This document shows, in pieces, positions 1,988-64,000 of a stretch of DNA of 64,000 bases. Numbering within the stretch: position 1 is the stretch's first letter; every line of letters begins with the position of its first letter. A program made the translations under genes and the position numbers. The notes beneath the pieces are model-generated. The model worked only from the letters and a program-made list of their open reading frames with translations. It made no database searches and was not told the DNA's origin. Source of the DNA: Haplodiscus bocki (taxonomy: Eukaryota); the NCBI GenBank assembly GCA_965655095.1, contig OZ296657.1, positions 63,736,001 to 63,800,000 of the forward strand, read 5' to 3'.

Positions 1988-2011
1988 TCACTGCATTTGT
2001 GGGGAGAATAC

Positions 2012-2340: not shown

Positions 2341-2347
2341 AGTCGGA

Positions 2348-2377
2348 TTTCGCGAAACATTTTCGGCAGCCAATCAG
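2348..2377 (+). promoter_or_regulatory. Palindrome TTTCGCGAAA (E2F-like) and NF-Y-type CCAAT box CAGCCAATCAG
   Basis: Direct motif matches at 2348-2357 and 2367-2377. Motif match only, with no functional evidence. Confidence 0.3.
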
Positions 2378-2507
2378 AATCGAGTATTAGATCATGCAAA
2401 GCATCACGATTCAGTCAGTTTGGGAACTCAAAACGTTTCAAAAAAGAGATTTTTAAGGAAAATCTTTGAACCGTGTCACAAATTGATTTGAAAAAAACTA
2501 CAACGCA

Positions 2508-3210
2508 TCAGATTTTGAAGAACACATTTTCCCAAAAAACTCAGATTTTGAGTAAATCTCTTTTAAAAAGTCAGTTTTCAAAGAAAAGATTATATCCAAA
2601 CATGAACGTTTTGACTCAATTTATTCCGTAAAAACGACAAATTTGCAATTTCAATGCTTTGTTAAACAGCATGAATTTCACAGAAGTTTTCTTGAATTTT
2701 CAGATTTTTTAAAAAATGAACAATTACCTTGTATCATATTTTGATTGAACTTTTTTTCAACATGTCAGATTTTGAATTTAGGATCTTACAGTGTTTCAGC
2801 GTTTGAAATAGAAATTCCTTGACAAGGCGGATTTTGAATTGCATATTTGTCAACGCGGCAGATTTTTAAAGAGAAAATTTTCCCCAAAAATCAGATTTCT
2901 AGTAAAAATTTTTTAAAAAGTCACTTTTTGAAAAAAATTTTCTTTCTAAACACAAACGTTTCGACTCGGTTTATTCCGCAAGAAACGAAAATTTTGCTAT
3001 TTCCGTGGTTTATTACAAGGCTTGACTTTCAAAACAACTTTCGGAAAATCTCATATTTTAAAAAAAATTAACATTGTGTCCTTGATTTAATTGAAAATTT
3101 TTCAAAGTGTCAGATTTTGAATTAAGAAATTTACAATGTTTAAGCTTTTGGAATAGAATTTCAACGACGCGGCAGTTTCTGAATTGGAAAAAAGTAAACG
3201 CGGCAGATGT
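2508..3210 (+). repeat. Old ~350-bp tandem duplication of the AT-rich monomer half at the array edge
   Basis: After GTCAACGCGGCAGATT (~2849-2864) the sequence jumps back and repeats the 2508-2858 order: TTTTCCC..AAAA.TCAGATTT, AAAAAGTCA.TTTT, AACGTTT.GACTC, TTTATTCCG, GTCAGATTTTGAATT, AACGCGGCAGAT. Confidence 0.85.
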
Positions 3211-5209
3211 TGATTGGGAAATTTTTCAACGTGACAGACCTCGAGTCTACTTCTGCAATTTGCCAAACTTTCATCCGTTTTTCAAATTATGATAGGTTTC
3301 GACAACGTTTTTATAGTATGCTGTGGGTTCGATTGGACGAGGTAATGTGTTCGGATGGTTTTCGTTTCTTCCAGCGGTGAATAACGTATTAGGACATTCT
3401 AAAACAGGCCAACTGATACCAGTGTGCTCACTAAAATTAGATATGGACTGGTGTGGGCAAATGTTTTACCAAAGACTATAGGGTTCGCATTGCACAGAGA
3501 TAATTTTCTCATTTCTTTGACTCGTTTTTGATAGCGTCATGTATTGTGATAAGCCATAGAGCCAAGCCGTTCAAGGTTCGGAGTTGGTTATAGAGAATGG
3601 AGGCTTAGGATTGTGTGCACTTATGTTTTACGGTAGAGTGAATTCCTGTAATTTACTGAGACAGGTTGCGGCTTCAGCTGTTTGCAGGTGGAGTACCTTA
3701 CAGAGTACAAGTTGATGAAGTTTTACTTCTTACTCGAAACCATCAAACAAATGTAACAAGTATGAGTAAGTTTCAAAAAAATACAATGCTATTGCCCGAG
3801 CAATCAATAGAAGTGAAGCAACTAAAACGAATAGCTACAATTGAAAAAACTGCTGCTCATCACAAACGATGGAACTCCATCCGTCACTCTCGCAACCAAA
3901 AGTCACTTAACTCTTCAACCGTAGCATTTGTTTCGCTCACTACTTTCTTGTAATAATGTTTGTTGTTATAGTGCTATTTTTCCCAGACTGGTGGGCAAAC
4001 TGACGTTTGACAGGTTTCGCTTGCACATCTGGCGACTAAATCCATAACAGACATAGTCGTTTATTTCTCCACTTTACAGCATTTTGGTATTAACTTTGAC
4101 CGTAGCAAAGATCACTCAGTCAGTACCGGATCTAAAAAACCTTTTAAAAGACAGACTTGTCGGAACAAATTTCGAACCGTGTCGGAATTTGATATTAAAA
4201 ATTTACAACACGTCATTTTTGAACAAGAAATTTTCCTCAAAAAGTCAGATTTTGAGTAAATCTCTCTTATAAAGTCACTTTTCGAAGAAAAATTCAAATC
4301 TAATAACGATCGTTTTGACTCAATTCACTCCGTAAAAACGACAACTTTGCAAATTCCGTGCTTTGTTACAAGGCATGATTTCCAATGAAATTTTCACGAA
4401 AAATCAGATTCAAAAAATTTACATTGTTTCACAAAATTGAATGAGAATTTTTCATCGTGTAAGACTTTGAATTAGAAATTTTCCAGTGTTTAAGCTTTTC
4501 GTACAGAATTTAATCGACGCGGCCGATTCTGAACTGCAAAAATGTCATCGCCGCAGATGTTGATTCGGAACTTTTTCAACGTGCCAGAATTTGAGTCTAC
4601 TTCTTCTGCAGTTTGCCAAACTTTCATGCGTTTTACAAATTAGGTTAGGTTTCAACAACGTTTTTATAGTATGCTGTGGGTTCGATTGGACGAGGTGTTG
4701 TGTTCGGATAGTTTCCGACTCTCCCAACGGTGTTTGGCGTGTTAGGACAATCTAAGACAGGCCTTTTGATACGAGTGTGTTCACTATAAATAGATATGGA
4801 TTGCTATGCGCAAATGTTTTACCAGAGAATACAGGGTTCGCAATGCACAGAGATAATCAGCCTCGTTTTTTGACTTGTTTATGAAAGCGTCGTGTTTTAT
4901 GATAAGCCAGAGAGCCAAACTGTTCAAGGTTTGAAGTTGGTTGTAGAGAATGGAGGCTTAGGTGGTTGTGCACTTATGTTTTAAGGTAGAGTGAATTCCT
5001 GTAATTTACTCAGACAGGTTGCGGCCTCAGCTGCTTATGGGATGAGTGTCCTACAGAGTAGAAGTTTATGAAGTTTTACTTCTTGCTGAAAATCAACAAA
5101 CAAAAGTACCAAAATTAAGTAAGTTTCAAAAGAGTACATAACGGTTGCCCCGGCAATCAATAGAAGCGAAACAACTGAAACAAATAGCTACATTGAAAAA
5201 AACTGCAGC

Positions 5210-5434
5210 TCAACACAATTGATATAACTCCTCCATCACTCTGGGCAAACGAAGGTCATTCCACTGTTCAACTGTAGCAATTGTTTCGTTCACTCGTTTG
5301 TTTTTAAAAAGTTTGATGTTAAAATGCTTTTCTTCCCAGATTGGTGGGCAAATTGACGTTTGGCAGTTTTCGCTGGTACATCGGTCGACTAAGTCATAAC
5401 AGACATAGTCGTTTATTTCTCCGCTGTACAGCAT
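5210..5434 (-). pseudogene. 74-aa Cys-rich ORF in about half of the monomers; possible coding remnant, no recognised homologue
   Basis: MLYSGEINDYVCYDLVDRCTSENCQTSICPPIWEEK... It is open in one set of monomers but frameshifted or stopped in others. It is the same frame as 1-195. Confidence 0.2.
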
Positions 5435-5494
5435 TTTGGTATTAACTTTGAACGTAGAAAAGATCTTTCAATCAGTACCGGATCTGAAAAACCC

Positions 5495-5950
5495 TTCAAA
5501 AATCAGATTTGTAAGAAAAATTTTTGAACCGTGTCAGATTTTGATTCGAAAATTTTACAACAAATCAGTTTTTGAACAAGAAATTTTTCTCAAAAAAATA
5601 GATTTTTAGTAAAAATCTGTTGAGAAGTTAGCTTTTGAAGAAAAGTTTATATCTAAAAACGATCATTTTGACTCAATTTACTCCGTAAAAACGACCCTTT
5701 TGCACTTTCCGTGCTTTGTTACAAGGCATGATTTCCAATGAAATTTTCACGAAAAATCAGATTCAAAAAATTTACATTGTTTCACAAAATTGAATGAGAA
5801 TTTTTCATCGTGTAAGACTTTGAATTAGAAATTTTCCAGTGTTTAAGCTTTTCGTACAGAATTTAATCGACGCGGCCGATTCTGAACTGCAAAAATGTCA
5901 TCGCCGCAGATGTTGATTCGGAACTTTTTCAACGTGCCAGAATTTGAGTC
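5495..5950 (+). repeat. Decayed ~31-bp internal sub-repeat (core CAGATTTTGA); example in one monomer, present in all
   Basis: AGATTT-like cores at 5505, 5536, 5567, 5600, 5630, 5759, 5815, 5846, 5877, 5908 and 5939. Confidence 0.85.
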
Positions 5951-8900
5951 TACTTCTTCTGCAGTTTGCCAAACTTTCATGCGTTTTACAAATTAGGATA
6001 GGTTTCAACAACGTTTTTATAGTATGCTGTGGGTTCGATTGGACGAGGTATTGTGTTCGGATAGTTTCCGACTCTCCCAACGGTGTTTAACGTGTTAGAA
6101 CAATCTAAAACAGGCCTTTTGATACGAGTGTGTTCACTCTAAATAGATATGGATCGCTATGCGCAAATGTTTTACCAGAGACTATAGGTTTCGCATTGCA
6201 CAGAGATAATTAGTCTCATTTCTTTGACTCGTTTTTCATAGCGTCATGTATTGTGATAAGCCATGGAGCCAAACCGTTCAAGGTTTGAAGATGGTTGTAC
6301 AGAATGGAGGCTTAGGTGGTTGTGCACTTTTGTTTCCGGTAGAGTGAAACGCAATATACTCAGACAGGTTGCGGCTTCATCTGCTCATGGGATGAGTGCC
6401 CTACAGAGTAGAAGTTTATGAAGTTTTACTTCTTGCTGAAAATCAAGAAACAAAAGTACCAAAATTAAGTAAGTTTCAAAAGAGTACATAACGGTTGCCC
6501 CGGCAATCAATAGAAGCGAAACAACTGAAACAAATAGCTACATTGAAAAAAAAATACAGCTCAACACAATTGATGGAACTCCTCCATCACTCTGGGCAAA
6601 CAAAGTTCATTCAACTTTTCAACTGTAGCATTTGTTTCGTTCACTCGTTTGTTTTTAAAAAGTTTGTTGTTATAATGCTTTTCTTCACAGATTGGTGGTT
6701 GGTGGGCAAATTGACGTTTGGCAGTTTTCGCTGGTACATCGGTCGACTACATCATAACAGACATAGTCGTTTATTTCTCCACTGTACAGCATTTTGGTAT
6801 TAACTTTGACCGTAGCAAAGATCACTCAGTCAGTACCGGATCTAAAAAACCTTTTAAAAGACAGACTTGTCGGAACAAATTTCGAACCGTGTCGGAATTT
6901 GATATTAAAAATTTACAACACGTCATTTTTGAACAAGAAATTTTCCTCAAAAAGTCAGATTTTGAGTAAATCTCTCTTATAAAGTCACTTTTCGAAGAAA
7001 AATTCAAATCTAATAACGATCGTTTTGACTCAATTCACTCCGTAAAAACGACAACTTTGCAAATTCCGTGCTTTGTTACAAGGCATGATTTCCAATGAAA
7101 TTTTCACGAAAAATCAGATTCAAAAAATTTACATTGTTTCACAAAATTGAATGAGAATTTTTCATCGTGTAAGACTTTGAATTAGAAATTTTCCAGTGTT
7201 TAAGCTTTTCGTACAGAATTTAATCGACGCGGCCGATTCTGAACTGCAAAAATGTCATCGCCGCAGATAATGATTCGGAACTTTTTCAACGTGCCAGAAT
7301 TTGAGTCTACTTCTTCTGCAGTTTGCCAAACTTTCATGCGTTTTACAAATTAGGATAGGTTTCAACAACGTTTTTATAGTATGCTGTGGGTTCGATTGGA
7401 CGAGGTATTGTGTTCGGATAGTTTCCGACTCTCCCAACGGTGTTTAACGTGTTAGGACAATCTAAAACAGGCCTTTTGATACGAGTGTGTTCACTCTAAA
7501 TAGATATGGATTGCTATGCGCAAATGTTTTACCAGAGAATACAGGGTTCGCAATGCACAGAGATAATCAGCCTCGTTTTTTGACTTGTTTATGAAAGCGT
7601 CGTGTTTTATGATAAGCCAGAGAGCCAAACTGTTCAAGGTTTGAAGTTGGTTGTAGAGAATGGAGGCTTAGGTGGTTGTGCACTTATGTTTTAAGGTAGA
7701 GTGAATTCCTGTAATTTACTCAGACAGGTTGCGGCCTCAGCTGCTTATGGGATGAGTGTCCTACAGAGTAGAAGTTTATGAAGTTTTACTTCTTGCTGAA
7801 AATCAACAAACAAAAGTACCAAAATTAAGTAAGTTTCAAAAGAGTACATAACGGTTGCCCCGGCAATCAATAGAAGCGAAACAACTGAAACAAATAGCTA
7901 CATTGAAAAAAACTGCAGCTCAACACAATTGATATAACTCCTCCATCACTCTGGGCAAACGAAGGTCATTCCACTGTTCAACTGTAGCAATTGTTTCGTT
8001 CACTCGTTTGTTTTTAAAAAGTTTGATGTTAAAATGCTTTTCTTCCCAGATTGGTGGGCAAATTGACGTTTGGCAGTTTTCGCTGGTACATCGGTCGACT
8101 AAGTCATAACAGACATAGTCGTTTATTTCTCCGCTGTACAGCATTTTGGTATTAACTTTGAACGTAGAAAAGATCTTTCAATCAGTACCGGATCTGAAAA
8201 ACCCTTCAAAAATCAGATTTGTAAGAAAAATTTTTGAACCGTGTCAGATTTTGATTCGAAAATTTTACAACAAATCAGTTTTTGAACAAGAAATTTTTCT
8301 CAAAAAAATAGATTTTTAGTAAAAATCTGTTGAGAAGTTAGCTTTTGAAGAAAAGTTTATATCTAAAAACGATCATTTTGACTCAATTTACTCCGTAAAA
8401 ACGACCCTTTTGCACTTTCCGTGCTTTGTTACAAGGCATGATTTCCAATGAAATTTTCACGAAAAATCAGATTCAAAAAATTTACATTGTTTCACAAAAT
8501 TGAATGAGAATTTTTCATCGTGTAAGACTTTGAATTAGAAATTTTCCAGTGTTTAAGCTTTTCGTACAGAATTTAATCGACGCGGCCGATTCTGAACTGC
8601 AAAAATGTCATCGCCGCAGATGTTGATTCGGAACTTTTTCAACGTGCCAGAATTTGAGTCTACTTCTTCTGCAGTTTGCCAAACTTTCATGAGTTTTACA
8701 AATTAGGATAGGTTTCAACAACGTTTTGATAGTATGCTGTGGGTTCGATTGGACGAGGTATTGTGTTCGGATAGTTTCCGACTCTCCCAACGGTGTTTAA
8801 CGTGTTAGGACAATCTAAAACAGGCCTTTTGATACGAGTGTGTTCACTCTAAATAGATATGGATCGCTATGCGCAAATGTTTTACCAGAGACTATAGGTT

Positions 8901-11900
8901 TCGCATTGCACAGAGATAATTAGTCTCATTTCTTTGACTCGTTTTTCATAGCGTCATGTATTGTGATAAGCCATGGAGCCAAACCGTTCAAGGTTTGAAG
9001 ATGGTTGTACAGAATGGAGGCTTAGGTGGTTGTGCACTTTTGTTTCCGGTAGAGTGAAACGCAATATACTCAGACAGGTTGCGGCTTCATCTGCTCATGG
9101 GATGAGTGCCCTACAGAGTAGAAGTTTATGAAGTTTTACTTCTTGCTGAAAATCAAGAAACAAAAGTACCAAAATTAAGTAAGTTTCAAAAGAGTACATA
9201 ACGGTTGCCCCGGCAATCAATAGAAGCGAAACAACTGAAACAAATAGCTACATTGAAAAAAAAACTACAGCTCAACACAATTGATGGAACTCCTCCATCA
9301 CTCTGGGCAAACAAAGTTCATTCAACTTTTCAACTGTAGCATTTGTTTCGTTCACTCGTTTGTTTTTAAAAAGTTTGTTGTTATAATGCTTTTCTTCACA
9401 GATTGGTGGTTGGTGGGCAAATTGACGTTTGGCAGTTTTCGCTGGTACATCGGTTGACTACATCATAACAGACATAGTCGTTTACTTCTCCGCTGTACAG
9501 CATTTTGCTATTAACTTTGAACGTAGAAAACATCTTTCAGTCAGTACCGGATCTGAAAAGCCCTCCAACAATCAGATTTCTAAGAAAAAATTTTGAACCG
9601 TGTCAGATTTTGATTCGAAAATTTTACAACAAATCAGTTTTTGAACAAGAAATTTTTCTCAAAAAAATTAGATTTTTAGTAGAAATCTTTTGAGAAGTTA
9701 GCTTTTGAAGAAAAGTTTATATCTAAATACGATCATTTTGACTCAATTTACTCCGTAAAAACGACCCTTTTGCACTTTCCGTGCTTTGTTACAAGGCATG
9801 ATTTCCAATGAAATTTTCACGAAAAATCAGATTCAAAAAATTTACATTGTTTCACAAAAATGAATGAGAATTTTTCATCGTGTAAGACTTTGAATTAGAA
9901 ATTTTCCAGTGTTTAAGCTTTTCGTACAGAATTTAATCGACGCGGCCGATTCTGAACTGCAAAAATGTCATCGCCGCAGATGTTGATTCGGAACTTTTTC
10001 AACGTGCCAGAATTTGAGTCTACTTCTTCTGCAGTTTGCCAAACTTTCATGCGTTTTACAAATTAGGATAGGTTTCAACAACGTTTTGATAGTATGCTGT
10101 GGGTTCGATTGGACGAGGTATTGTGTTCGGATAGTTTCCGACTCTCCCAACGGTGTTTAACGTGTTAGGACAATCTAAAACAGGCCTTTTGATACGAGTG
10201 TGTTCACTCTAAATAGATATGGATCGCTATGCGCAAATGTTTTACCAGAGACTATAGGTTTCGCATTGCACAGAGATAATTAGTCTCATTTCTTTGACTC
10301 GTTTTTCATAGCGTCATGTATTGTGATAAGCCATGGAGCCAAACCGTTCAAGGTTTGAAGATGGTTGTACAGAATGGAGGCTTAGGTGGTTGTGCACTTT
10401 TGTTTCCGGTAGAGTGAAACGCAATATACTCAGACAGGTTGCGGCTTCAGCTGCTCATGGGATGAGAGCCCTACAGAGTAGAAGTCTATGAAGTTTTACT
10501 TCTTGCTGAAAATCAAGAAACAAAAGTACCAAAATTAAGTAAGTTTCAAAAGAGTACATAACGGTTGCCCCGGCAATCAATAGAAGCGAAACAGCTGAAA
10601 CAAATAGCTACATTGAAAAAAAACTACAGCTCAACACAATTGATGGAACTCCTCCATCACTCTGGGCAAACAAAGGTCATTCAACTTTTCAACTGTAGCA
10701 TTTGTTTCGTTCACTTGTTTGTTTTTAAAAAGTTTGTTGTTATAATGCTTTTCTTCAGAGACTGGTGGTTGGTGGGCAAATTGACGTTTGGCAGTTTTCG
10801 CTGGTACATCGGTCGACTACATCATAACAGACATAGTCGTTTAATTCTCCGCTGTACAGCATTTTGGTATTAACTTTGAACGTAGAAAACATCTTTCAGT
10901 CATTACCGGATCTGAAAAACCCTCCAAAAATCAGATTTGTAAGAAAAAATTTTGAACCGTGTCAGATTTTGATTCGAAAATTTTACAACAAATCAGTTTT
11001 TGAACAAGAAATTTTTCTCAAAAAAAAATAGATTTTTAGTAGAAATCTTTTGAGAAGTTAGCTTTTGAAGAAAAGTTTATATCTAAATACGATCATTTTG
11101 ACTCAATTTACTCCGTAAAATTGACCCTTTTGCACTTTCCGTGCTTTGTTACAAGGCATGATTTCCAATGAAATTTTCACTAAAAATTAGATTCAAAAAA
11201 ATTACATTGTTTCATAAATTTGAATGAGAATTTTTCATCGTGTAAGACTTTGAATTAGAATTTTTCCAGTGTTTAAGCTTTTCGAACAGAATTTAATCGA
11301 CGCGGCAGATTCTGAATTGCAAAAATGTCATCGCGGCAGATGTTAATTCGGAACTTTTTCAACGTGCCAAAAATTGAGTTTACTTCTTCTGCAGTTTGCC
11401 AAACTTTCATCCGTTTTTCAAATTAGGATAGGCTTCAACAACGTTTTTATAGTATGCTGTGGGTTCGATTGGACGAGGTATTGTGTTCGGATAGTTTTTG
11501 TTTCTCCCAACGGTGTTTAACGTGTTAGGACAATCTAAGACAGGCCATCTGATACGAGTGTGTTCACTATATTTGGATATGGATTGGTCTGCGCAAGTGT
11601 CCTACCACAGGCTACAGTGTTCGCAATGCACAGACTTGAATAGTGTCTTTTTTTACGAATCGTTTATGATAGCGTCATTTATTATGATAAGCATAGAGCC
11701 AAACTGTTCAAGGTTTGAAGTTGGTTATAGAGAATGGAGGCTTAGGATGTTGCGCACTTTTAATTTACGGTGAAGTGAACTCCTGCATATTACTCAGACA
11801 GCTTGCGGCCTCAGCTGCTTATGGGAGGAGTACCCTACAGAGTAGAAGTTTATGAAGTTTTACTTCTTGCTGAAAATCAACAAACAAAAGTACCAAAAAT

Positions 11901-46520: not shown

Positions 46521-46524
46521 TCAA

Positions 46525-52055: not shown

Positions 52056-54999
52056 AATGTGTTCGGATGGTTTTCGTTTCTTCCAGCGGTGAATAACGTA
52101 TTAGGACATTCTAAGACAGGCCAACTGATACCAGTGTGCTCACTAAAATTAGATATGGACTGGTGTGGGCAAATGTTTTACCAAAGACTATAGGGTTCGC
52201 ATTGCACAGAGATAATTAATCTCATTTCTTTGACTCGTTTTTGATAGCGTCATGTATAGTGATAAGCCATGGAGCCAAACCGTTCAAGGTTTGAAGATGG
52301 TTGTACAGAATGGAGGCTTAGGTGGTTGTGCACTTTTGTTTCCGGTAGAGTGAAATGCAATTTACTCAGACAGGTTGCGGCCTCAGCTGCTTATGGGATG
52401 AGTACCCTACAGAGTAGAATTTTATGTAGTTTTACTTCTTGCTGAAAAGCAACAAACAAAAGTACCAAAATTAAGTAAGTTTCAAAAGAGTACATAACGG
52501 TTGCCCCGGCAATCAATAGAAGCAAAACAACTGAAACAAATAGCTACATTGAAAAAAACTACAGCTCAAAACAATTGATCGAACTCCTCCATCACTATGG
52601 GCAAACGAAGGTCATTCCACTGTTCAACTGTAGCAATTGTTTCGTTCACTCGTTTGTTTTTGAAAAGTTTGTTGTTAAAATGCTTTTCTTCCCAGATTGG
52701 TGGGCAAATTGACGTTTGGCAGTTTTCGCTGGTACATCGGTCGACTAAGTCATAACAGACATAGTCGTTTATTTCTCCACTGTACAGCATTTTTTGTATT
52801 AACTTTGACCGTAGCAAAGATCACTCAGTCAGTACCGGATCTGAAACGCCCTTCAAAAATCAGATTTGTAAGAAAAAAATTTGAACTGTGTCAGATTTTG
52901 ATTCCAAAAATTTTACAACATATCAGTTTTTGAACAAGAAATTTTCTCAAAAAATTAGGTTTTTAGTAAATCTCTTTTATAAAGTCACTTTTCGAAGAAA
53001 CGTTCAAATCCAATAACGATCGTTTTGACTCAATTTACTCCGTAAAAACGACAACTTTGCAAATTCCGTGCTTTTTTACAAGGCATGATTTCCAATGAAA
53101 CTTTCAAGAAAAATCAGATTCAAAAAATTTACATTGTTTAACAAAATTGAATGAGAATTTTTCATTGTGTAAGACTTTGAAGTAGAAAATTTCCAGTGTT
53201 CAAGCTTTTCGAAAAAAATTTAATCGCCGCGGCAGATTCTGAATTGCAAAATTGTCATTGCGGCAGATGCTGATTCGGAACTTTTTCAACGTGCCAGAAT
53301 TTGAGTCTACTTCTTCTGCAGTTTGCCAAACTTTCATCCGTTTTTCAAATTAGGATAGGTTTCAACAACGTTTTTATAGTATGCTGTGGGTTCGATTGGA
53401 CGAGGTACTGTGTTTGGATAGTTTGCGTTTCTCCCAACGGTGTTTAACTTGTTAGGAAAATCTAAGACAGGCCTTTTGATAAGAGTGTGTTCACTATAAA
53501 TAGACATGGATTGCTATGCGCAAATGTTTTACCAGAGACTGTAGGGTTCGCAATGCACAGAGATTTTCAGCCTCGTTTTTTGACTCGTTTATGATAGCGT
53601 CATGTTTTATGACAAGCCACAGAGCCAAACTGTTCAAGGTTTGAAGTTGGTTGTAGAGAATGGAGGCTTAGGTGGTTGTGCACTTATGTTTTACGGTAGA
53701 GTGAAATGCATTTTACTCAGACAGGTTGCGGCCTCGGCTGCTTATGGGAGGAGTACCCTACAGAGTAGAAGTTTATGAAGTTTTACTTCTTGCTGAAAAT
53801 CAACAAACAAAAGTACCAAAATTAAGTAAGTTTCAAAAGAGTACATAACGGTTGCCCCGGCAATCAATAGAAGCGAAACAACTGAAACAAATAGCTACAT
53901 TGAAAAAAACTACAGCTCAACACAATTGATGGAACTCCTCCATCACTCTGGGCAAACGAAAGTCCATCCACTGTTCAACTGTAGCAATTGTTTCGTTCAC
54001 TCGTTTGTTTTTAAAAAGTTTGTTGTTATAATGCTTTTCTTCCCAGATTGGTGGGCAAATTGACGTTTGGCAGTTTTCGCTGGTACATCTGTCGACTAAG
54101 TTATAACAGACATAGTCGTTTATTTCTCCGCTGTACAGAATTTTGGTAATAACTTTGAACGTAGAAAAGATCTTTCAGTCACTACCGGATCTGAAAAGCC
54201 CTTCAAAAATCAGATTTGTAAGAAAAATTTTGAACTGTGTCAGATTTTGGTTCCAAAAATTTTACAACATATCAGTTTTTGAACAAGAAAATTTTCTCAA
54301 AAATTAGGTTTTTAGTAAATATCTTTTGAGATGTCAGCTTTTGAAGAAAAGTTTATATCTAAATACGATCAATTTGACTCAATTTACTCCGTAAAAACGA
54401 CCCTTTTGCACTTTCCGTGCTTTGTTACAAGGCATGATTTCCAATGAAACTTTCAGGAAAAATCAGATTAAAAAATATTACATTGTTTCATAATTTTGAA
54501 TGAGAATTTTTCATCGTGTAAGATTTTGAATTAGAAAATTTCCAGTGTTCAAGCTTTTCGAAAAGAATTTAATCGACGCGGCCGATTCTGAACTGCAAAA
54601 ATGTCATCGCCGCAGATGTTGATTCGGAACTTTTTCAACGTGCCAGAATTTGAGTCTACTTCTTCTGCAGTTTGCCAAACGTTCATCCGTTTTTCAAATT
54701 AGGATAGGTTTCAACAACGTTTTTATAGTATGCTGTGGGTTCGATTGGACGAGGTATTGTGTTCGGATAGCTTTCGTTTCTCCCAACGGTGTTTAACTTA
54801 TTAGGAAAATCTCAGACAGGCCGTTTGATAAGAGTGTGTTCACTATAAAAAGATATGGATTGCTATGCGCAAATGTTTTACCAGAGACTATAGGGTTCGC
54901 AATGCACAGAGATTTTCAGTCTCGTTTTTTGACTCGTTTATGATAGCGTCATGTTTTATGACAAGCCACAGAGCCCAACTGTTCAAGGTTTGAAGTTGG

Positions 55000-57900
55000 T
55001 TGTAGAGAATGCAGGCTTAGGTGGTTGTGCACTTATGTTTTACGGTAGAGTGAAATGCAATTTACTCAGACAGGTTGCGGCCTCAGCTGCTTATGGGAGG
55101 AGTAACCTACAGAGTAGAAGTTTATGAAGTTTTACTTCTTGCTGAAAATCAACAAACAAAAGTACCAAAATTAAGTAAGTTTCAAAAGAGTACATAACGG
55201 TTGCCCCGGCAATCAATAGAAGCGAAACAAATGAAACAAATAGCTACATTGAAAAAAACTAAAGCTCAGCACAATTGATGGAACTCCTCCATCACTCTGG
55301 GCAAACGAAGGTCCATCCACTGTTCAACAGTAGCAATTGTTTCGTTCACTCGTTTGTTTTTAAAAAGTTTGTTGTTATAATGCTTTTCTTCCCAGATTGG
55401 TGGGCAAATTGACGTTTGGCAGTTTTCGCTGGTACATCTGTCGACTAAGTTATAACAGACATAGTCGTTTATTTCTCCGCTGTACAGCATTTTAGTAATA
55501 ACTTTGAACGTAGAAAAGATCTTTCAGTCAGTACCGGATCTGAAAAGCCCTTCAAAAATCAGATTTGTAAGAAAAAATTTTGAACTGTGTCAGATTTTGG
55601 TTCCAAAAATTTTACAACATATCAGTTTTTGAACAAGAAATTTTTCTCAAAAAATTAGGTTTCTAGTAAATGTCTTTTGAGATATCAGCTTTCGAAGAAA
55701 ATTTTATATCTAAATACGATCATTTTGACTCAATTTACTCCGTAAAAACGACCCTTTTGCACTTTCCGTGCTTTGTTACAACGCATGATTTCCAGAGAAA
55801 ATTTCAAGAAAAATCAGATTTAAAAAAAAATACATTGTTTCATAGTTTTGAATGAGAATTTTTCAACGTGTAAGACTTTGAATTAGAAAATTTCCAGTGT
55901 TTAAGCTTTTCGAACAGAATTTAATTGACGCGGCAGATTCTGAATTGCAAAATTGTCATCGCGGCAGATGCTGACTCGGAACTTTTTCAAAGTGCCAGAA
56001 TTTGAGTCCACTTCTTCTGCAGTTTGCCAAACTTTCATCCATTTTTCAAATTAGGATAGGTTTCAACAACGTTTTTATAGTATGCTGTGGGTTCGAATGG
56101 ACGAAGTATTGTGTTCGGATAGTTTCCGACTCTCCCAACGGTGTTTAACGTGTTAGGACAATCTAAGACAGGCATTTTGATACGAGTGTGTTCACTAAAA
56201 ATAGATAAGGATTGCTATGCGCAAATGTATTACCAGAGACTATAGGGTTCGGAATGTACAGAGATTTTCAGCCTCGTTTTTTGACTCGTTTATGATAGCG
56301 TCATGTTTTATGACAAGCCACAGAGCCAAACTGTTCAAGGTTTGAAGTTGGTTTTAGAGAATGGAGGCCTAGGTGGTTGTGCACTTATGTTTTACGGTAG
56401 AGTGAAATGCAATTTACTCAGACAGGTTGCGGCCTCAGCTGCTTATGGGAGGAGTAACCTACAGAGTAGAAGTTTATGAAGTTTTACTTCTTGCTGAAAA
56501 TCAACAAACAAAAGTACCAAAATTAAGTAAGTTTCAAAAGAGTACATAACGGTTGCCCCGGCAATCAATAGAAGCGAAACAAATGAAACAAATAGCTACA
56601 TTGAAAAAAACTAAAGCTCAGCACAATTGATGGAACTCCTCCATCACTCTGGGCAAACGAAGGTCCATCCACTGTTCAACAGTAGCAATTGTTTCGTTCA
56701 CTCGTTTGTTTTTAAAAAGTTTGTTGTTATAATGCTTTTCTTCCCAGATTGGTGGGCAAATTGACGTTTGGCAGTTTTCGCTGGTACATCTGTCGACTAA
56801 GTTATAACAGACATAGTCGTTTATTTCTCCGCTGTACAGCATTTTAGTAATAACTTTGAACGTAGAAAAGATCTTTCAGTCAGTACCGGATCTGAAAAGC
56901 CCTTCAAAAATCAGATTTGTAAGAAAAAATTTTGAACTGTGTCAGATTTTGGTTCCAAAAATTTTACAACATATCAGTTTTTGAACAAGAAATTTTTCTC
57001 AAAAAATTAGGTTTCTAGTAAATGTCTTTTGAGATGTCAGCTTTCGAAGAAAATTTTATATCTAAATACGATCATTTTGACTCAATTTACTCCGTAAAAA
57101 CGACCCTTTTGCACTTTCCGTGCTTTGTTACAACGCATGATTTCCAGAGAAAATTTCAAGAAAAATCAGATTTAAAAAAAAATACATTGTTTCATAGTTT
57201 TGAATGAGAATTTTTCAACGTGTAAGACTTTGAATTAGAAAATTTCCAGTGTTTAAGCTTTTCGAACAGAATTTAATTGACGCGGCAGATTCTGAATTGC
57301 AAAATTGTCATCGCGGCAGATGCTGACTCGGAACTTTTTCAAAGTGCCAGAATTTGAGTCCACTTCTTCTGCAGTTTGCCAAACTTTCATCCATTTTTCA
57401 AATTAGGATAGGTTTCAACAACGTTTTTATAGTATGCTGTGGGTTCGAATGGACGAAGTATTGTGTTCGGATAGTTTCCGACTCTCCCAACGGTGTTTAA
57501 CGTGTTAGGACAATCTAAGACAGGCATTTTGATACGAGTGTGTTCACTAAAAATAGATAAGGATTGCTATGCGCAAATGTATTACCAGAGACTATAGGGT
57601 TCGGAATGTACAGAGATTTTCAGCCTCGTTTTTTGACTCGTTTATGATAGCGTCATGTTTTATGACAAGCCACAGAGCCAAACTGTTCAAGGTTTGAAGT
57701 TGGTTTTAGAGAATGGAGGCCTAGGTGGTTGTGCACTTATGTTTTACGGTAGAGTGAAATGCAATTTACTCAGACAGGTTGCGGCCTCAGCTGCTTATGG
57801 GAGGAGTAACCTACAGAGTAGAAGTTTATGATGTTTTACTTCTTGCTGAAAATCAACAAACAAAAGTACCAAAATTAAGTAGGTTTCAAAATAGTACATA

Positions 57901-60900
57901 ACGGTTGCCCCGGCAATCAATAGAAGCGAAACAACTGAAACAAATAGCTACATTGAAAAAAACTACAGCTCAACACAATTGATGGAACTCCTCCATCACT
58001 CTGGGCAAACGAAGGTCCATCCACTGTTCAACTGTAGCAATTGTTTCGTTCACTCATTTGTTTTTAAAAAGTTTGTTGTTATAATGCTTTTCTTCCCAGA
58101 TTGGTGGGCAAATTGACGTTTGGCAGTTTTCGCTGGTACATCTGTCGACTAAGTTATAACAGACATAGTCGTTTATTTCTCCGCTGTACAGCATTTTGGT
58201 AATAACTTTGAACGTAGAAAAGATCTTTCAGTCAGTACCGTATCTGAAAAGCCCTTCAAAAATCAGATTTCTAAGAAAAAATTTTGAACTGTGTCAGCTT
58301 TTGATACCAAAAATTTTACAACATATCGGTTTTTGAACATGAAATTTTTCTCAAAAAATTAGGTTTTTGGTAAAAATCTTTTAAGATGTCAGCTTTTGAA
58401 GAAAAGTTTATATCTAAATACGATCAATTTGACTCAATTTACTCCGTAAAAACGACCCTTTTGCACTTTCCGTGCTTTGTTACAACGCATGATTTCCAGA
58501 GAAAATTTCAAGAAAAATCAGATTTAAAAAAATTACATTGTTTCATAGTTTTGAATGAGAATTTTTCAACGTGTAAGACTTTGAATTAGAAAATTTCCAG
58601 TGTTTAAGCTTTTCGAACAGAATTTAATTGACGCGGCAGATTCTGAATTGCAAAATTGTCATCGCGGCAGATGCTGACTCGGAACTTTTTCAAAGTGCCA
58701 GAATTTGAGTCCACTTCTTCTGCAGTTTGCCAAACTTTCATCCATTTTTCAAATTAGGATAGGTTTCAACAACGTTTTTATAGTATGCTGTGGGTTCGAA
58801 TGGACGAAGTATTGTGTTCGGATAGTTTCCGACTCTCCCAACGGTGTTTAACGTGTTAGGACAATCTAAGACAGGCATTTTGATACGAGTGTGTTCACTA
58901 AAAATAGATAAGGATTGCTATGCGCAAATGTATTACCAGAGACTATAGGGTTCGGAATGTACAGAGATTTTCAGCCTCGTTTTTTGACTCGTTTATGATA
59001 GCGTCATGTTTTATGACAAGCCACAGAGCCAAACTGTTCAAGGTTTGAAGTTGGTTTTAGAGAATGGAGGCCTAGGTGGTTGTGCACTTATGTTTTACGG
59101 TAGAGTGAAATGCAATTTACTCAGACAGGTTGCGGCCTCAGCTGCTTATGGGAGGAGTAACCTACAGAGTAGAAGTTTATGATGTTTTACTTCTTGCTGA
59201 AAATCAACAAACAAAAGTACCAAAATTAAGTAGGTTTCAAAATAGTACATAACGGTTGCCCCGGCAATCAATAGAAGCGAAACAACTGAAACAAATAGCT
59301 ACATTGAAAAAAACTACAGCTCAACACAATTGATGGAACTCCTCCATCACTCTGGGCAAACGAAAATCCATCCACTGTTCAACTGTAGCAATTGTTTCGT
59401 TCACTCATTTGTTTTTAAAAAGTTTGTTGTTATAATGCTTTTCTTCCCAAATTGGTGGGCAAATTGACGTTTGGCAGTTTTCGCTGGTACATCTGTCGAC
59501 TAAGTTATAACAGACATAGTCGTTTATTTCTCCGCTGTACAGCATTTTGGTAATAACTTTGAACGTAGAAAAGATCTTTCAGTCAGTACCGTATCTGAAA
59601 AGCCCTTCAAAAATCAGATTTCTAAGAAAAAATTTTGAACTGTGTCAGCTTTTGATACCAAAAATTTTACAACATATCGGTTTTTGAACATGAAATTTTT
59701 CTCAAAAAATTAGGTTTTTGGTAAATATCTTTTAAGATGTCAGCTTTTGAAGAAAAGTTTATATCTAAATACGATCAATTTGACTCAATTTACTCCGTAA
59801 AAACGACCCTTTTGCACTTTCCGTGCTTTGTTACAACGCATGATTTCCAGAGAAAATTTCAAGAAAAATCAGATTTAAAAAAATTACATTGTTTCATAGT
59901 TTTGAATGAGAATTTTTCAACGTATAAGACTTTGAATTAGAAAATTTCCAGTGTTTAAGCTTTTCGAACAGAATTTAATTGACGCGGCAGATTCTGAATT
60001 GCAAAATTGTCATCGCGGCAGATGCTGACTCGGAACTTTTTCAAAGTGCCAGAATTTGAGTCCACTTCTTCTGCAGTTTGCCAAACTTTCATCCATTTTT
60101 CAAATTAGGATAGGTTTCAACAACGTTTTTATAGTATGCTGTGGGTTCGAATGGACGAAGTATTGTGTTCGGATAGTTTCCGACTCTCCCAACGGTGTTT
60201 AACGTGTTAGGACAATCTAAGACAGGCATTTTGATACGAGTGTGTTCACTAAAAATAGATAAGGATTGCTATGCGCAAATGTATTACCAGAGACTATAGG
60301 GTTCGGAATGTACAGAGATTTTCAGCCTCGTTTTTTGACTCGTTTATGATAGCGTCATGTTTTATGACAAGCCACAGAGCCAAACTGTTCAAGGTTTGAA
60401 GTTGGTTTTAGAGAATGGAGGCCTAGGTGGTTGTGCACTTATGTTTTACGGTAGAGTGAAATGCAATTTACTCAGACAGGTTGCGGCCTCAGCTGCTTAT
60501 GGGAGGAGTAACCTACAGAGTAGAAGTTTATGATGTTTTACTTCTTGCTGAAAATCAACAAACAAAAGTACCAAAATTAAGTAGGTTTCAAAATAGTACA
60601 TAACGGTTGCCCCGGCAATCAATAGAAGCGAAACAACTGAAACAAATAGCTACATTGAAAAAAACTACAGCTCAACACAATTGATGGAACTCCTCCATCA
60701 CTCTGGGCAAACGAAGGTCCATCCACTGTTCAACTGTAGCAATTGTTTCGTTCACTCATTTGTTTTTAAAAAGTTTGTTGTTATAATGCTTTTCTTCCCA
60801 AATTGGTGGGCAAATTGACGTTTGGCAGTTTTCGCTGGTACATCTGTCGACTAAGTTATAACAGACATAGTCGTTTATTTCTCCGCTGTACAGCATTTTG

Positions 60901-63900
60901 GTAATAACTTTGAACGTAGAAAAGATCTTTCAGTCAGTACCGTATCTGAAAAGCCCTTCAAAAATCAGATTTCTAAGAAAAAATTTTGAACTGTGTCAGC
61001 TTTTGATACCAAAATTTTTACAACATATCGGTTTTTCAACATGAAATTTTTCTCAAAAAATTAGGTTTTTGGTAAATATCTTTTAAGATGTCAGCTTTTG
61101 AAGAAAAGTTTATATCTAAATACGATCAATTTGACTCAATTTACTCCGTAAAAACGAACCTTTTGCACTTTCCGTGCTTTGTTACAACGCATGATTTCCA
61201 GAGAAAATTTCAAGAAAAATCAGATTTAAAAAAATTACATTGTTTCATAGTTTTGAATGAGAATTTTTCAACGTGTAAGACTTTGAATTAGAAAATTTCC
61301 ATTTTTAAGCTTTTCGAACAGAATTTAATTGACGCGGCAGATTCTGAATTGCAAAATTGTCATCGCGGCAGATGCTGACTCGGAACTTTTTCAAAGTGCC
61401 AGAATTTGAGTCCACTTCTTCTGCAGTTTGCCAAACTTTCATCCATTTTTCAAATTAGGATAGGTTTCAACAACGTTTTTATAGTATGCTGTGGGTTCGA
61501 ATGGACGAAGTATTGTGTTCGGATAGCTTTCGTTTCTCCCAACGGTGTTTAACTTATTAGGAAAATCTCAGACAGGCCGTTTGATAAGAGTGTGTTCACT
61601 ATAAATAGATATGGATTGCTATGCGCAAATGTTTTACCAGAGACTATAGGGTTCGCAATGCACAGAGATTTTCAGTCTCGTTTTTTGACTCGTTTATGAT
61701 AGCGTCATGTTTTATGACAAGCCACAGAGCCCAACTGTTCAAGGTTTGAAGTTGGTTGTAGAGAATGCAGGCTTAGGTGGTTGTGCACTTATGTTTTACG
61801 GTAGAGTGAAATGCAATTTACTCAGACAGGTTGCGGCCTCAGCTGCTTATGGGAGGAGTAACCTACAGAGTAGAAGTTTATGAAGTTTTACTTCTTGCTG
61901 AAAATCAACAAACAAAAGTACCAAAATTAAGTAAGTTTCAAAAGAGTACATAACGGTTGCCCCGGCAATCAATAGAAGCGAAACAAATGAAACAAATAGC
62001 TACATTGAAAAAAACTAAAGCTCAGCACAATTGATGGAACTCCTCCATCACTCTGGGCAAACGAAGGTCCATCCACTGTTCAACAGTAGCAATTGTTTCG
62101 TTCACTCGTTTGTTTTTAAAAAGTTTGTTGTTATAATGCTTTTCTTCCCAGATTGGTGGGCAAATTGACGTTTGGCAGTTTTCGCTGGTACATCTGTCGA
62201 CTAAGTTATAACAGACATAGTCGTTTATTTCTCCGCTGTACAGCATTTTAGTAATAACTTTGAACGTAGAAAAGATCTTTCAGTCAGTACCGGATCTGAA
62301 AAGCCCTTCAAAAGTCAGATTTGTAAGAAAAAATTTTGAATTGTGTCAGATTTTGGTTCCAAAAATTTTACAACATATCAGTTTTTGAACAAGAAATTTT
62401 TCTCAAAAAATTAGGTTTCTAGTAAATGTCTTTTGAGATGTCAGCTTTCGAAGAAAATTTTATATCTAAATACGATCATTTTGACTCAATTTACTCCGTA
62501 AAAACGACCCTTTTGCACTTTCCGTGCTTTGTTACAACGCATGATTTCCAGAGAAAATTTCAAGAAAAATCAGATTTAAAAAAATTACATTGTTTCATAG
62601 TTTTGAATGAGAATTTTTCAACGTGTAAGACTTTGAATTAGAAAATTTCCATTTTTAAGCTTTTCGAACAGAATTTAATTGACGCGGCAGATTCTGAATT
62701 GCAAAATTGTCATCGCGGCAGATGCTGACTCGGAACTTTTTCAAAGTGCCAGAATTTGAGTCCACTTCTTCTGCAGTTTGCCAAACTTTCATCCATTTTT
62801 CAAATTAGGATAGGTTTCAACAACGTTTTTATAGTATGCTGTGGGTTCGAATGGACGAAGTATTGTGTTCGGATAGCTTTCGTTTCTCCCAACGGTGTTT
62901 AACTTATTAGGAAAATCTCAGACAGGCCGTTTGATAAGAGTGTGTTCACTATAAATAGATATGGATTGCTATGCGCAAATGTTTTACCAGAGACTATAGG
63001 GTTCGCAATGCACAGAGATTTTCAGTCTCGTTTTTTGACTCGTTTATGATAGCGTCATGTTTTATGACAAGCCACAGAGCCCAACTGTTCAAGGTTTGAA
63101 GTTGGTTGTAGAGAATGCAGGCTTAGGTGGTTGTGCACTTATGTTTTACGGTAGAGTGAAATGCAATTTACTCAGACAGGTTGCGGCCTCAGCTGCTTAT
63201 GGGAGGAGTAACCTACAGAGTAGAAGTTTATGAAGTTTTACTTCTTGCTGAAAATCAACAAACAAAAGTACCAAAATTAAGTAAGTTTCAAAAGAGTACA
63301 TAACGGTTGCCCCGGCAATCAATAGAAGCGAAACAAATGAAACAAATAGCTACATTGAAAAAAACTAAAGCTCAGCACAATTGATGGAACTCCTCCATCA
63401 CTCTGGGCAAACGAAGGTCCATCCACTGTTCAACAGTAGCAATTGTTTCGTTCACTCGTTTGTTTTTAAAAAGTTTGTTGTTATAATGCTTTTCTTCCCA
63501 GATTGGTGGGCAAATTGACGTTTGGCAGTTTTCGCTGGTACATCTGTCGACTAAGTTATAACAGACATAGTCGTTTATTTCTCCGCTGTACAGCATTTTA
63601 GTAATAACTTTGAACGTAGAAAAGATCTTTCAGTCAGTACCGGATCTGAAAAGCCCTTCAAAAGTCAGATTTGTAAGAAAAAATTTTGAATTGTGTCAGA
63701 TTTTGGTTCCAAAAATTTTACAACATATCAGTTTTTGAACAAGAAATTTTTCTCAAAAAATTAGGTTTCTAGTAAATGTCTTTTGAGATGTCAGCTTTCG
63801 AAGAAAATTTTATATCTAAATACGATCATTTTGACTCAATTTACTCCGTAAAAACGACCCTTTTGCACTTTCCGTGCTTTGTTACAACGCATGATTTCCA

Positions 63901-64000
63901 GAGAAAATTTCAAGAAAAATCAGATTTAAAAAAAAATACATTGTTTCATAGTTTTGAATGAGAATTTTTCAACGTGTAAGACTTTGAATTAGAAAATTTC
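55000..64000 (+). repeat. Second monomer subfamily domain
   Basis: Diagnostic variants GGAGTAACCT, TCCATCCAC, GTAATAACTTTG, ACGCATGATTTCCAGAG and TTCGAATGGACGAAG are shared by monomers here and absent from 4-50 kb. Confidence 0.9.

What the first reader, a model, noticed from the sequence alone, without database searches (positions are those of the whole stretch)
2410..64000. >61-kb array of a 1.35-kb complex monomer: candidate centromeric or heterochromatic macrosatellite
Seen: ~45 head-to-tail monomers with no insertion of foreign DNA, a homogeneous interior and a degraded edge. Established: kb-scale tandem arrays usually carry 5S, SL RNA, snRNA, tRNA or histone genes, but I find none of these. 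A homogeneous core with HORs and older diverged flanks is the architecture of alpha-satellite centromeres. Inference: this may be a structural or silenced array with an unusually long monomer.
Basis: partly seen in the sequence, partly recalled or inferred. Interest (0 to 1): 0.7.

Follow-up and report, generated by a model that had tools for sequence, protein, structure and literature searches.

The report
Satellite array born inside a transposon
The 1.35-kb tandem array is real and carries no genes, but it is a single-locus amplification (about 70 copies) of an inner piece of one giant mirror-image transposon, a known way for satellite DNA to arise, and very probably not a centromere.

Summary
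From window 2396 to 64000 there are 44.5 full units of 1344-1364 bp plus one degraded first unit. The array continues about 34 kb past the window, for roughly 98 kb and 70 units at C10:63.738-63.834 Mb.

No Rfam family, tRNA, ORF of 105 aa or more, or Pfam domain was found.

The unit is not a free-standing satellite. It is an internal 1.34-kb segment of a dispersed, non-coding, palindromic (foldback) element of 14-21 kb with thousands of copies. That element's ends carry the Maverick/Polinton end motif 5'-(AGT)2...(ACT)2-3', and one of two tested pairs has a 6-bp target duplication.

The array lies inside one copy of this element. The left flank is the unamplified arm in inverted orientation, and the last unit runs into the rest of the right arm.

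The tandem-specific junction occurs 39 times in the 1.5-Gb genome, all at this locus. A centromere role is therefore unsupported but not excluded, and the 'silenced' reading is untested.

The array has a young core (a 20.3-kb block present twice at 99.2% identity), a second homogeneous domain, and an old right third.

The scan noted transposon-born single-locus satellites and a giant foldback family on other windows of this genome. This is a new member of a known kind.

The parts
1..1313 (-). The single, unamplified counterpart of the satellite unit in arm A of the foldback element. The arm continues leftward about 4.9 kb beyond the window to the family terminus at about C10:63,731,061.
   Evidence: BLAST to the unit dimer: 198-1520 on window 1305-12, 73.5%. 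Global identity to array units is 75-77%, and 80% to the last unit.
1314..1878 (-). Centre-proximal part of arm A. This is parent-element sequence that is missing from arm B.
   Evidence: L001 940-3694 aligns to the inverted left flank, 68% over 2.8 kb. The conserved upstream flank is shared with 8 dispersed copies.
1896..1986 (-). A 91-bp fragment 87% identical to unit positions 289-379. It is closer to the array core than arm A's own unit is. Unexplained.
1990..2390 (.). 56/28-bp sub-repeats that form the centre of the palindromic parent element.
   Evidence: TRF finds period 56 at 2113-2296 and period 28 at 2237-2330. The same repeats lie at the centre of L001, in both orientations around position ~575, and upstream in the other dispersed copies.
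2396..3761 (+). First, degraded unit of arm B's array. It starts at unit position ~341 and carries an internal duplication (341-799 followed by 419-1348). Arm B's own centre-proximal ~1.2 kb is deleted.
   Evidence: 73.6% and 79-80% identity
3762..5114 (+). Edge unit m01, about 92% identical to the core.
5115..25409 (+). Young core, first copy of the 15-unit (20.3-kb) block. It is built from about 10 unit subtypes that differ by 3-13%.
   Evidence: 99.2% identity to 25410-45706 over 20,307 columns. The first 13 unit pairs are 98.8-100% identical (12 of them 99.6-100%).
25410..45706 (+). Young core, second copy of the 20.3-kb block.
   Evidence: 16-mer spacing peak at 20,296
45707..52470 (+). 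End of the core (m32-m34) and two divergent units (m35-m36, about 87% to the core).
52471..64000 (+). m37 plus the second homogeneous domain (m38-m47, mean 96.9% among themselves, 91% to the core). The domain continues to window-equivalent ~67,333. The old domain (m48-m67, mean 84%) follows, outside the window.
20175..20201 (+). Example of the tandem-specific junction, where the end of the parent segment is joined to its start.
   Evidence: The 27-mer with <=2 mismatches gives 39 hits in the genome, all at C10:63,741,289-63,810,660 on the + strand. The reversed control gives 0.

Best explanation
This is a transposon-born, single-locus macrosatellite. One copy of a giant, gene-less, mirror-image (foldback) element inserted here. 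The family is normally 14-21 kb long, with two arms of about 7.3 kb around a centre of 56-bp repeats, and its outer ends have the Maverick/Polinton end motif. In the right arm, a non-repetitive 1.34-kb inner segment starting about 1.1 kb from the palindrome's centre was duplicated head to tail by an illegitimate join. Unequal exchange between sister chromatids or homologues then expanded it to about 70 units and stretched the element to 108 kb. Repeated local exchange produced the layers seen: an old diverged third, a homogeneous 10-unit domain, and a young core whose 20.3-kb block was duplicated last. Shown: the homology, the in-situ position, the single-locus status and the age layers. Inferred: the exchange mechanism, and the idea that breakage near the centre of the long palindrome started it (arm B has lost its centre-proximal 1.2 kb exactly where the array begins). 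The array most likely has no function of its own.
For: The unit matches thousands of dispersed candidates on all 12 large contigs. There are 2397 candidates with the array unit (65-75% identity in the scored matches) and 6508 with a family unit (81-94%). All ten dispersed loci examined match the part of the unit that ends at position ~183. In the nine that also hold its 5' part, the match begins at ~192-217. In the eight copies whose boundaries were inspected, the flanking sequence on both sides is conserved between copies, so the unit is an inner segment of a larger element. The last unit continues into the parent's downstream sequence: L001 1496-3706 aligns across the array's right end. The left flank is the same element inverted. 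Flanks A and B are 84% alike over 2.8 kb, 91% over 4.2 kb and 95-97% at the outer end. The family terminus is sharp in 8 dispersed copies. At least 10 terminus pairs lie in (-)...(+) order 14-21 kb apart, and none lie in the reverse order. Arms L033/L039 are 84% alike for 1.7 kb. The ends read AGTAGT...ACTACT, with a 6-bp duplication GATATT in that pair. This is the end motif and duplication length reported for Mavericks (PMC8097293). The neighbouring coding Maverick-like element M2 has AGTAGT ends and the 6-bp duplication CGTGTT. The junction 27-mer is confined to this locus. Array units are equidistant from arm A's unit (75-77%, last unit 80%) and further from a copy on another chromosome (67-68%), so they form one local lineage. 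Contigs from two further runs of the same study (possibly the assembly's own sample, so not independent) show both the tandem joint and, more often, the parent's downstream continuation. No RNA family, tRNA, long ORF or Pfam domain was found. Other family copies show smaller internal tandem duplications, so the arms are prone to it. The literature lists tandem amplification of central segments of DNA transposons as a known route, and a foldback element (Tetris) as a satellite source (PMC12628747; PMC4079207).
Against: The exchange mechanism itself leaves no unique signature, and rolling-circle amplification of an excised circle would give the same end state. No clear microhomology could be read at the founding junction because the copies are too diverged. 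Arms A and B share 735 bp beyond the family's normal terminus, and both lack the last heptamer. The locus may therefore be a local inverted duplication rather than a plain insertion. Arm-to-arm identity falls from 97% at the outer end to 76-80% in the unit, which a simple 'identical arms at insertion' model does not explain. The second terminus pair tested (L036/L038) shows no clean target duplication. The arm shares nothing but the end motif with the neighbouring Mavericks. Absence of function is assumed, not shown: no chromatin or RNA data were available.
Confidence: 0.8

Rival explanations
1. Same origin in the foldback arm, but the array was made in one or a few bursts. A 1.34-kb circle excised from the arm was copied by rolling-circle replication and re-integrated by homology at its source, rather than growing by stepwise unequal exchange.
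For: The unit is a clean, circularly closed segment with a single junction type, in two sequence variants, throughout the array. Long palindromes and inverted repeats favour hairpin and loop excision (review PMC12628747).
Against: The array has at least three age layers, with identities ranging from 79% to 100% and nested local duplications (dimers, and a 20.3-kb block). These need repeated later exchange in any case. Two 1.7-kb units and the first unit carry their own internal duplications.
Confidence: 0.12
2. The array is, or is part of, a chromosome-specific centromere or neocentromere of contig C10.
For: Tandem array with higher-order structure and age layering. It is non-genic. From general knowledge, not checked here: chromosome-specific centromeric satellites with kb-size, transposon-derived units are reported in potato.
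Against: The junction occurs at a single locus only. The array is about 98 kb on a 92.3-Mb contig, at 69% of its length. It is embedded in one transposon copy with both arms preserved. No other satellite was found in 20 sampled 10-kb stretches from -40 kb to +574 kb. Two structurally complete 18-kb Maverick-like elements lie 0.6 and 22 kb away. Earlier notes on this genome describe several similar small transposon-born arrays elsewhere, so the type is common here and not tied to one per chromosome.
Confidence: 0.04
3. The locus is a functional source of small RNAs. Read-through across the inverted arm A and the roughly 70 units of arm B gives hairpin or antisense RNA that feeds silencing of the thousands of foldback copies. 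The array would then be kept because it boosts that output.
For: The head-to-head arms give the geometry for double-stranded RNA. The unit is homologous to thousands of dispersed copies.
Against: Arm A's unit is only 75-80% identical to the array units, and the array is 65-75% identical to most dispersed copies. That is too diverged for efficient targeting. No RNA run holds the sequence in the index searched. No constraint is visible: units drift to <87% identity in the old part.
Confidence: 0.03
4. The array length or the 20.3-kb repeat block is an assembly artefact.
For: Two 20.3-kb blocks at 99.2% identity are the kind of structure assemblers can duplicate or collapse.
Against: The blocks differ at 136 positions and 12 gaps, and their last two units differ by 2-4%. 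They are therefore distinct sequences. Short-read contigs from two runs carry the tandem joint. Unit variants change smoothly along the array.
Confidence: 0.01

Closest known systems
Tetris foldback transposon and its TIR-220 satellite in Drosophila virilis (PMC4079207)
   Same: A non-autonomous foldback element is the source of the repeat. Long arrays originate inside element copies, and arrays coexist with dispersed element copies.
   Different: In Tetris the amplified piece is a pre-existing ~220-bp tandem repeat within the terminal inverted repeats, and arrays occur at many sites. Here a non-repetitive 1.34-kb inner segment of a 7.3-kb arm was amplified at one locus only. The element's own 56-bp sub-repeats stayed short.
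Satellites formed by tandem amplification of a transposon segment (review: PMC12628747)
   Same: The unit equals a sub-segment from the central part of a DNA transposon. Expansion is attributed to unequal exchange, and inverted repeats or palindromes are proposed as triggers.
   Different: Most described cases are found as free arrays whose parent is inferred by similarity. Here the parent copy is still intact around the array, with the unamplified mirror arm as an internal control.
Maverick/Polinton virus-like elements (PMC8097293)
   Same: The end motif 5'-(AGT)2...(ACT)2-3', a 6-bp target duplication (one pair) and an overall length of 14-21 kb. Coding Maverick-like elements with the same end hexamer and a 6-bp duplication lie next door.
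   Different: The foldback family has no polymerase, integrase or capsid gene and no long ORF in the arms. It is a full-length palindrome rather than a coding core between 0.1-1-kb inverted repeats. It has 37% GC against 24-29%, and no internal similarity to the neighbouring Mavericks.
Alpha-satellite-type centromeric arrays
   Same: Head-to-tail units, higher-order blocks, and a younger homogeneous part next to older diverged units.
   Different: The unit is 1.35 kb, not ~170 bp. There is one 98-kb locus in the genome, inside a transposon copy. The layering is asymmetric. No centromere-protein data exist.
Helitron/Helentron-carried satellites (e.g. Pacific oyster, PMC7492417; also noted on other windows of this genome)
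   Same: Satellite-like arrays that are linked to a mobile element and scattered as small loci.
   Different: Those units are ~170-bp internal repeats carried and spread by rolling-circle elements. This unit has no internal periodicity, and its parent has inverted arms and Maverick-type ends.

Membership tests
Gene-bearing kb-scale tandem arrays (5S, SL RNA, snRNA, tRNA, histone) | Each unit holds a recognisable RNA or protein gene | tested here: not met
   Rfam gave no match at E<=1 on 1-12000 and none at gathering score on 1-64000. ARAGORN found 0 genes. There is no ORF >=105 aa. Pfam found nothing above cutoff for the longest ORFs.
Transposon-derived satellite DNA | Unit homologous to a defined part of an interspersed element | tested here: met
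   2397-6508 dispersed candidates. All ten copies examined match the 3' part of the unit up to position ~183, nine also match its 5' part from ~192-217, and the flanks are conserved in the eight copies inspected.
Transposon-derived satellite DNA | Head-to-tail array far beyond the copy number found in the element | tested here: met
   About 70 units here, against 1 per arm in dispersed copies and in arm A.
Transposon-derived satellite DNA | Array edges continuous with the parent element (in-situ origin) | tested here: met
   The right edge runs into the parent's downstream sequence. The left edge abuts the palindrome centre and arm A.
Foldback-type transposon (parent element) | Long inverted arms making up most or all of the element | tested here: met
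   At least 10 (-)...(+) terminus pairs 14-21 kb apart. Arm pairs are 84-97% alike. L001's two arm units are 94% alike, 2.3 kb apart.
Foldback-type transposon (parent element) | Sub-repeats within the arms and no coding capacity | tested here: met
   56/28-bp repeats lie at the centre. No ORF above 129 aa was found in the stretches holding the arms, and there are no Pfam hits.
Foldback-type transposon (parent element) | Target-site duplication showing transposition | tested here: inconclusive
   6-bp GATATT in pair L033/L039, and none in pair L036/L038. No further pairs could be fetched.
Maverick/Polinton-mobilised non-autonomous element (parent element) | End motif 5'-(AGT)2 ... (ACT)2-3' | tested here: met
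   The terminus ...CTCTCTTACTACT is seen intact in most of the 8 dispersed copies aligned (worn in two). The motif is as described in PMC8097293. The coding neighbour M2 has AGTAGT ends.
Maverick/Polinton-mobilised non-autonomous element (parent element) | 6-bp target-site duplication | tested here: inconclusive
   One of two pairs. M2 itself has the perfect 6-bp CGTGTT.
Maverick/Polinton-mobilised non-autonomous element (parent element) | Terminal repeat sequence shared with an autonomous partner beyond the end motif | tested here: not met
   No blastn or tblastx similarity between the arm and M1, M2 or two further Maverick-like stretches. Other Maverick lineages of the genome were not searched.
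Centromeric satellite | Occupies the centromere and binds CENP-A/CenH3 | not testable with these tools
   No chromatin data. No RNA or ChIP runs were indexed for this sequence.
Centromeric satellite | Family present at the centromeres of many chromosomes, or a dominant Mb-scale chromosome-specific array | tested here: not met
   The junction 27-mer is found only at C10:63.741-63.811 Mb. The array is about 98 kb in total.
Macrosatellite (descriptive class: unit >1 kb, one or few loci) | Unit above 1 kb, tandem, confined to one or few loci | tested here: met
   Units are 1344-1364 bp at a single locus. Copy-number polymorphism was not testable.

The most novel reading that the evidence does not exclude
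The amplified arm is not inert. Together with the inverted, unamplified arm it forms a hairpin-RNA or small-RNA source that the host uses against the thousands of Maverick-ended foldback copies. Alternatively, the array has been adopted as the chromosome-specific centromere core of C10. In either case the locus would be a freshly born functional satellite with its transposon parent still visible around it.
Probability: 0.06. Interest if true: 0.65.

Novelty: new member of a known kind. Interest (0 to 1): 0.3.

Why it matters
It turns a 'mystery macrosatellite' into a clean, datable example of how satellite DNA is born. The parent transposon copy is still intact on both sides, the mirror arm serves as an unamplified control, and the array shows successive layers of expansion. 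It also links satellite birth to a little-known class of giant, gene-less foldback elements with Maverick/Polinton ends. For genome annotation, such arrays in this species should be masked as transposon-derived repeats and should not be used as centromere markers without chromatin evidence.

Tried and rejected
- TRF on the whole window found nothing, because its period limit is 500 bp. I replaced it with a k-mer spacing histogram and BLAST tiling.
- I first read the unit as a complete small element tandemly joined, as in Helitron-like rolling-circle concatemers. I rejected this when the flanks of dispersed copies proved conserved on both sides.
- Helitron/Helentron parentage, suggested by earlier notes on other arrays of this genome, was rejected for this array. 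The parent has inverted arms and AGTAGT...ACTACT ends, and the unit has no ~170-bp periodicity.
- The 735-bp extension beyond the arm terminus was tested as the terminal repeat of the neighbouring Maverick-like elements. No match was found.
- Arm and unit were compared with M1/M2 by blastn and tblastx. No similarity was found.
- Splice-like signals at the unit's borders and a short conserved minus-strand ORF were considered as exon evidence. Pfam found nothing, so I dropped this.
- Read laying gave only short contigs from one study and six fragments from a second organism. That is not enough to judge copy number, expression or conservation.
- No consensus of the parent or of the Maverick-like elements was built.

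Full report
**1. The observation**

The window is C10:63,736,001-63,800,000 of a 1.5-Gb eukaryotic assembly with 12 large contigs. C10 is 92.3 Mb.

TRF cannot see periods above 500 bp and returned nothing. A 16-mer spacing histogram peaks at 1350-1360 bp, with secondary peaks at about 2.7, 5.4, 17.6 and 20.3 kb. From position 4001 onward, 95-100% of positions lie in repeated 16-mers.

BLAST of one unit (window 20001-21352) tiles the + strand without gaps from 3762 to 64000 as 44.5 units at 86-100% identity. Degraded copies lie at 2410-2866 and 2830-3759.

The array does not end with the window. Adjacent stretches are fully covered by units for another 34 kb, and the array ends near C10:63,833,900. 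Stretches further out on either side have no unit at all. In total there are 67 full units of 1344-1364 bp, two 1.7-kb units with an internal duplication of about 340 bp, a degraded first unit and a partial last one. That is about 98 kb.

**2. No gene in the unit**

- Rfam gives no match at E<=1 on 12 kb and none at gathering score on the whole window.
- ARAGORN finds no tRNA.
- There is no ORF of 105 aa or more in 64 kb.
- The ten longest ORFs of the units and arms have no Pfam match above cutoff.
- The unit has no internal tandem periodicity.

**3. The unit is an inner segment of an interspersed element**

A search of the genome with the unit gave 2397 candidates on all large contigs. The scored matches are 65-75% identical. 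With a typical family copy as query there were 6508 candidates, and the scored matches are 81-94% identical.

All ten dispersed loci match the part of the unit that ends at position ~183. In the nine that also hold its 5' part, the match begins at ~192-217. In the eight copies whose boundaries I inspected, the DNA on both sides of that segment is conserved between copies. Similarity between copies runs for at least 3.5 kb. So the unit is not a whole element.

**4. The parent is a giant foldback element with Maverick-type ends**

- The family has a sharp terminus...CCACCTGATCAGCTCACTCTCTTACTACT, followed by unique DNA in eight dispersed copies.
- Among the scored terminus hits, at least ten fall into (-)...(+) pairs 14-21 kb apart, and none fall in the opposite order.
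- One pair (L033/L039) is reverse-complementary for 1.7 kb at 84%.
- The centre of the palindrome consists of 56/28-bp sub-repeats, at window 2113-2330 and around L001 ~575.
- One arm measures 7,330 bp from centre to terminus, and the unit lies at arm positions 1078-2390.
- Read inward, the ends are AGTAGTAAGAGAG.... This is the 5'-(AGT)2...(ACT)2-3' motif described for Mavericks, which also make 6-bp target duplications (PMC8097293).
- Pair L033/L039 has the 6-bp duplication GATATT. Pair L036/L038 has none.

The arms hold no long ORF and no Pfam domain. They share nothing with the neighbouring coding Maverick-like elements except the end hexamer. I therefore call the parent a non-autonomous foldback element with Maverick-type ends, probably moved by a Maverick integrase. 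The last step is inference.

I could not show by sequence that it is the same family.

**5. The array sits inside one copy**

- Window 1-2390 plus the DNA to its left is arm A, on the minus strand. It has a single unit (window 1-1313), the centre-proximal segment (1314-1878) and the central sub-repeats (1990-2390).
- The array starts at 2396, at unit position ~341. Arm B has therefore lost its own centre-proximal 1.2 kb.
- At the far end, the last unit runs straight into the parent's downstream sequence.
- The two flanks are inverted copies of each other: 84% over 2.8 kb, 91% over 4.2 kb, and 95-97% at the outer 1.2-2.7 kb.
- The family termini lie at about C10:63,731,061 and 63,839,039. This copy is therefore 108 kb instead of 14-21 kb, and the excess equals the extra units.

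**6. Single locus**

The 27-base junction that exists only in the tandem arrangement occurs 39 times in the genome with up to two mismatches. All hits lie between C10:63,741,289 and 63,810,660 on the + strand, and the reversed control gave none.

Contigs of two other runs from the same study show the tandem joint. More often they show the parent's downstream sequence following unit position 183, as expected if dispersed copies outnumber arrayed ones. These runs may come from the same sample as the assembly, so they are not independent.

No 1.35-kb-spaced hits were seen at any other locus among the scored matches. The family does show other internal duplications:
- units 4.3 kb apart on C3 and C9;
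- units 6.4 kb apart on C1;
- partial-unit duplications on C3, C6 and C3349.

**7. Age structure**

The identity matrix of the 67 full units shows these layers:
- m02-m34 is the young core. It has about ten subtypes that differ by 3-13%. The block 5115-25409 recurs at 25410-45706 with 99.2% identity over 20.3 kb.
- m35-m36 are divergent.
- m38-m47 form a homogeneous domain (mean 96.9%).
- m48-m67 are old (mean 84%), with local dimer duplications.

All units are equally distant from arm A's unit (75-77%), and the last one is closest (80%). A copy on another chromosome is 67-68% identical to all of them. The units therefore descend from one local founder.

**8. Mechanism**

Shown: origin in place from one arm. 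Inferred: a first illegitimate head-to-tail join of the 1.34-kb segment, then repeated unequal exchange, with the 20.3-kb block duplication last.

The array begins next to the palindrome's centre, exactly where arm B has a deletion. This suggests that breakage of the long palindrome started the process, but it remains a suggestion.

No microhomology could be read at the junction, because the copies are too diverged. A rolling-circle burst is a rival for the first step.

**9. Centromere and silencing**

Nothing supports a centromere:
- one 98-kb locus;
- an array inside a transposon copy;
- no further satellite in the sampled neighbourhood;
- two structurally complete 18-kb Maverick-like elements within 0.6-46 kb.

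A centromere role cannot be excluded without CenH3 data. CpG observed/expected is 0.92-1.02 in the array, against 0.75-0.80 in the arms and 0.73-1.18 in the flanks. There is therefore no footprint of long-term cytosine methylation. No RNA run holds the sequence in the index searched, which does not show that it is silent.

**10. Comparison and novelty**

Tandem amplification of central segments of DNA transposons is a listed route to satellites (PMC12628747). A foldback element, Tetris, is a documented satellite source (PMC4079207).

This case differs in three ways:
- the amplified piece is a non-repetitive kb-size segment rather than a pre-existing short tandem repeat;
- the parent is a Maverick-ended giant foldback;
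- the parent copy is preserved around the array.

I rate it a new member of a known kind.

**11. Open points**

- Arms A and B share 735 bp beyond the family terminus. Both lack the last heptamer and are followed, after about 9 bp, by a segment that begins with the family's end heptamer in the opposite orientation.
- Arm-to-arm identity falls steeply toward the array.
- A 91-bp fragment at 1896-1986 is closer to the array core than arm A's own unit is.

**12. Limits**

Only two terminus pairs could therefore be read.
- Organism names are coded.
- I built no consensus of the foldback or Maverick-like elements and proposed no repair of any of their genes.

Noticed in passing
L019-L022 = C10:63,840,001-63,880,000 (outside the window, 40-80 kb right of its end): There are two AT-rich (24-29% GC) Maverick/Polinton-like elements of about 18 kb. 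M1 is at 63,840,352-63,858,398, with 485-bp terminal repeats at 97%. M2 is at 63,862,202-63,880,293, with 926-bp terminal repeats at 97.5%, AGTAGT ends and the 6-bp target duplication CGTGTT. They are 70-86% alike and densely packed with open frames. Pfam finds a double-jelly-roll capsid domain (L019:7174-8421, minus strand) and an Endonuclease VII domain (L021:5508-6863, minus strand).
   Followed up: partly
L028 = C10:64,000,001-64,010,000 and L030 = C10:64,300,001-64,310,000: More AT-rich (26-28% GC) stretches. L028 holds an 817-aa open frame, running off the locus end, with a protein-primed family-B DNA polymerase domain (E 3e-17) and an Endonuclease VII domain. This suggests further Maverick-like copies in this region of C10.
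   Followed up: partly
L031/L032: C10:~63,730,325-63,731,060 and ~63,839,042-63,839,779: Both arms of the array-bearing foldback copy are followed by the same 735-bp segment at 96-97% identity, beyond the family's normal terminus. It starts with a CT microsatellite, a ~9-bp spacer, AGTAGTA and a GT microsatellite. Its outer ends show no target duplication.
   Followed up: partly
G000 C3:125,265,412-125,278,835; C9:2,428,209-2,433,905; C1:135,080,734-135,108,681: Other copies of the foldback family carry same-strand repeats of the unit-bearing segment, spaced 4.3 kb apart (C3 and C9) or 6.4 kb apart (C1). Larger pieces of the arm have therefore been tandemly duplicated elsewhere.
   Followed up: no
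window 1896-1986 (minus strand): A 91-bp fragment 87% identical to unit positions 289-379 sits between arm A's proximal segment and the central sub-repeats. It is closer to the array core than arm A's own unit (73%).
   Followed up: no
L012 (C10:63,706,001-63,716,000): A 200-base run of N, which is an assembly gap or masked stretch, lies about 20-30 kb left of the window.
   Followed up: no
run X5 (organism B), laid on window 20001-22706: One 151-base contig of a different, coded organism matches window 21252-21402 without a single difference. Its other five fragments are diverged. This could be a close relative, a shared transposon or cross-contamination.
   Followed up: no
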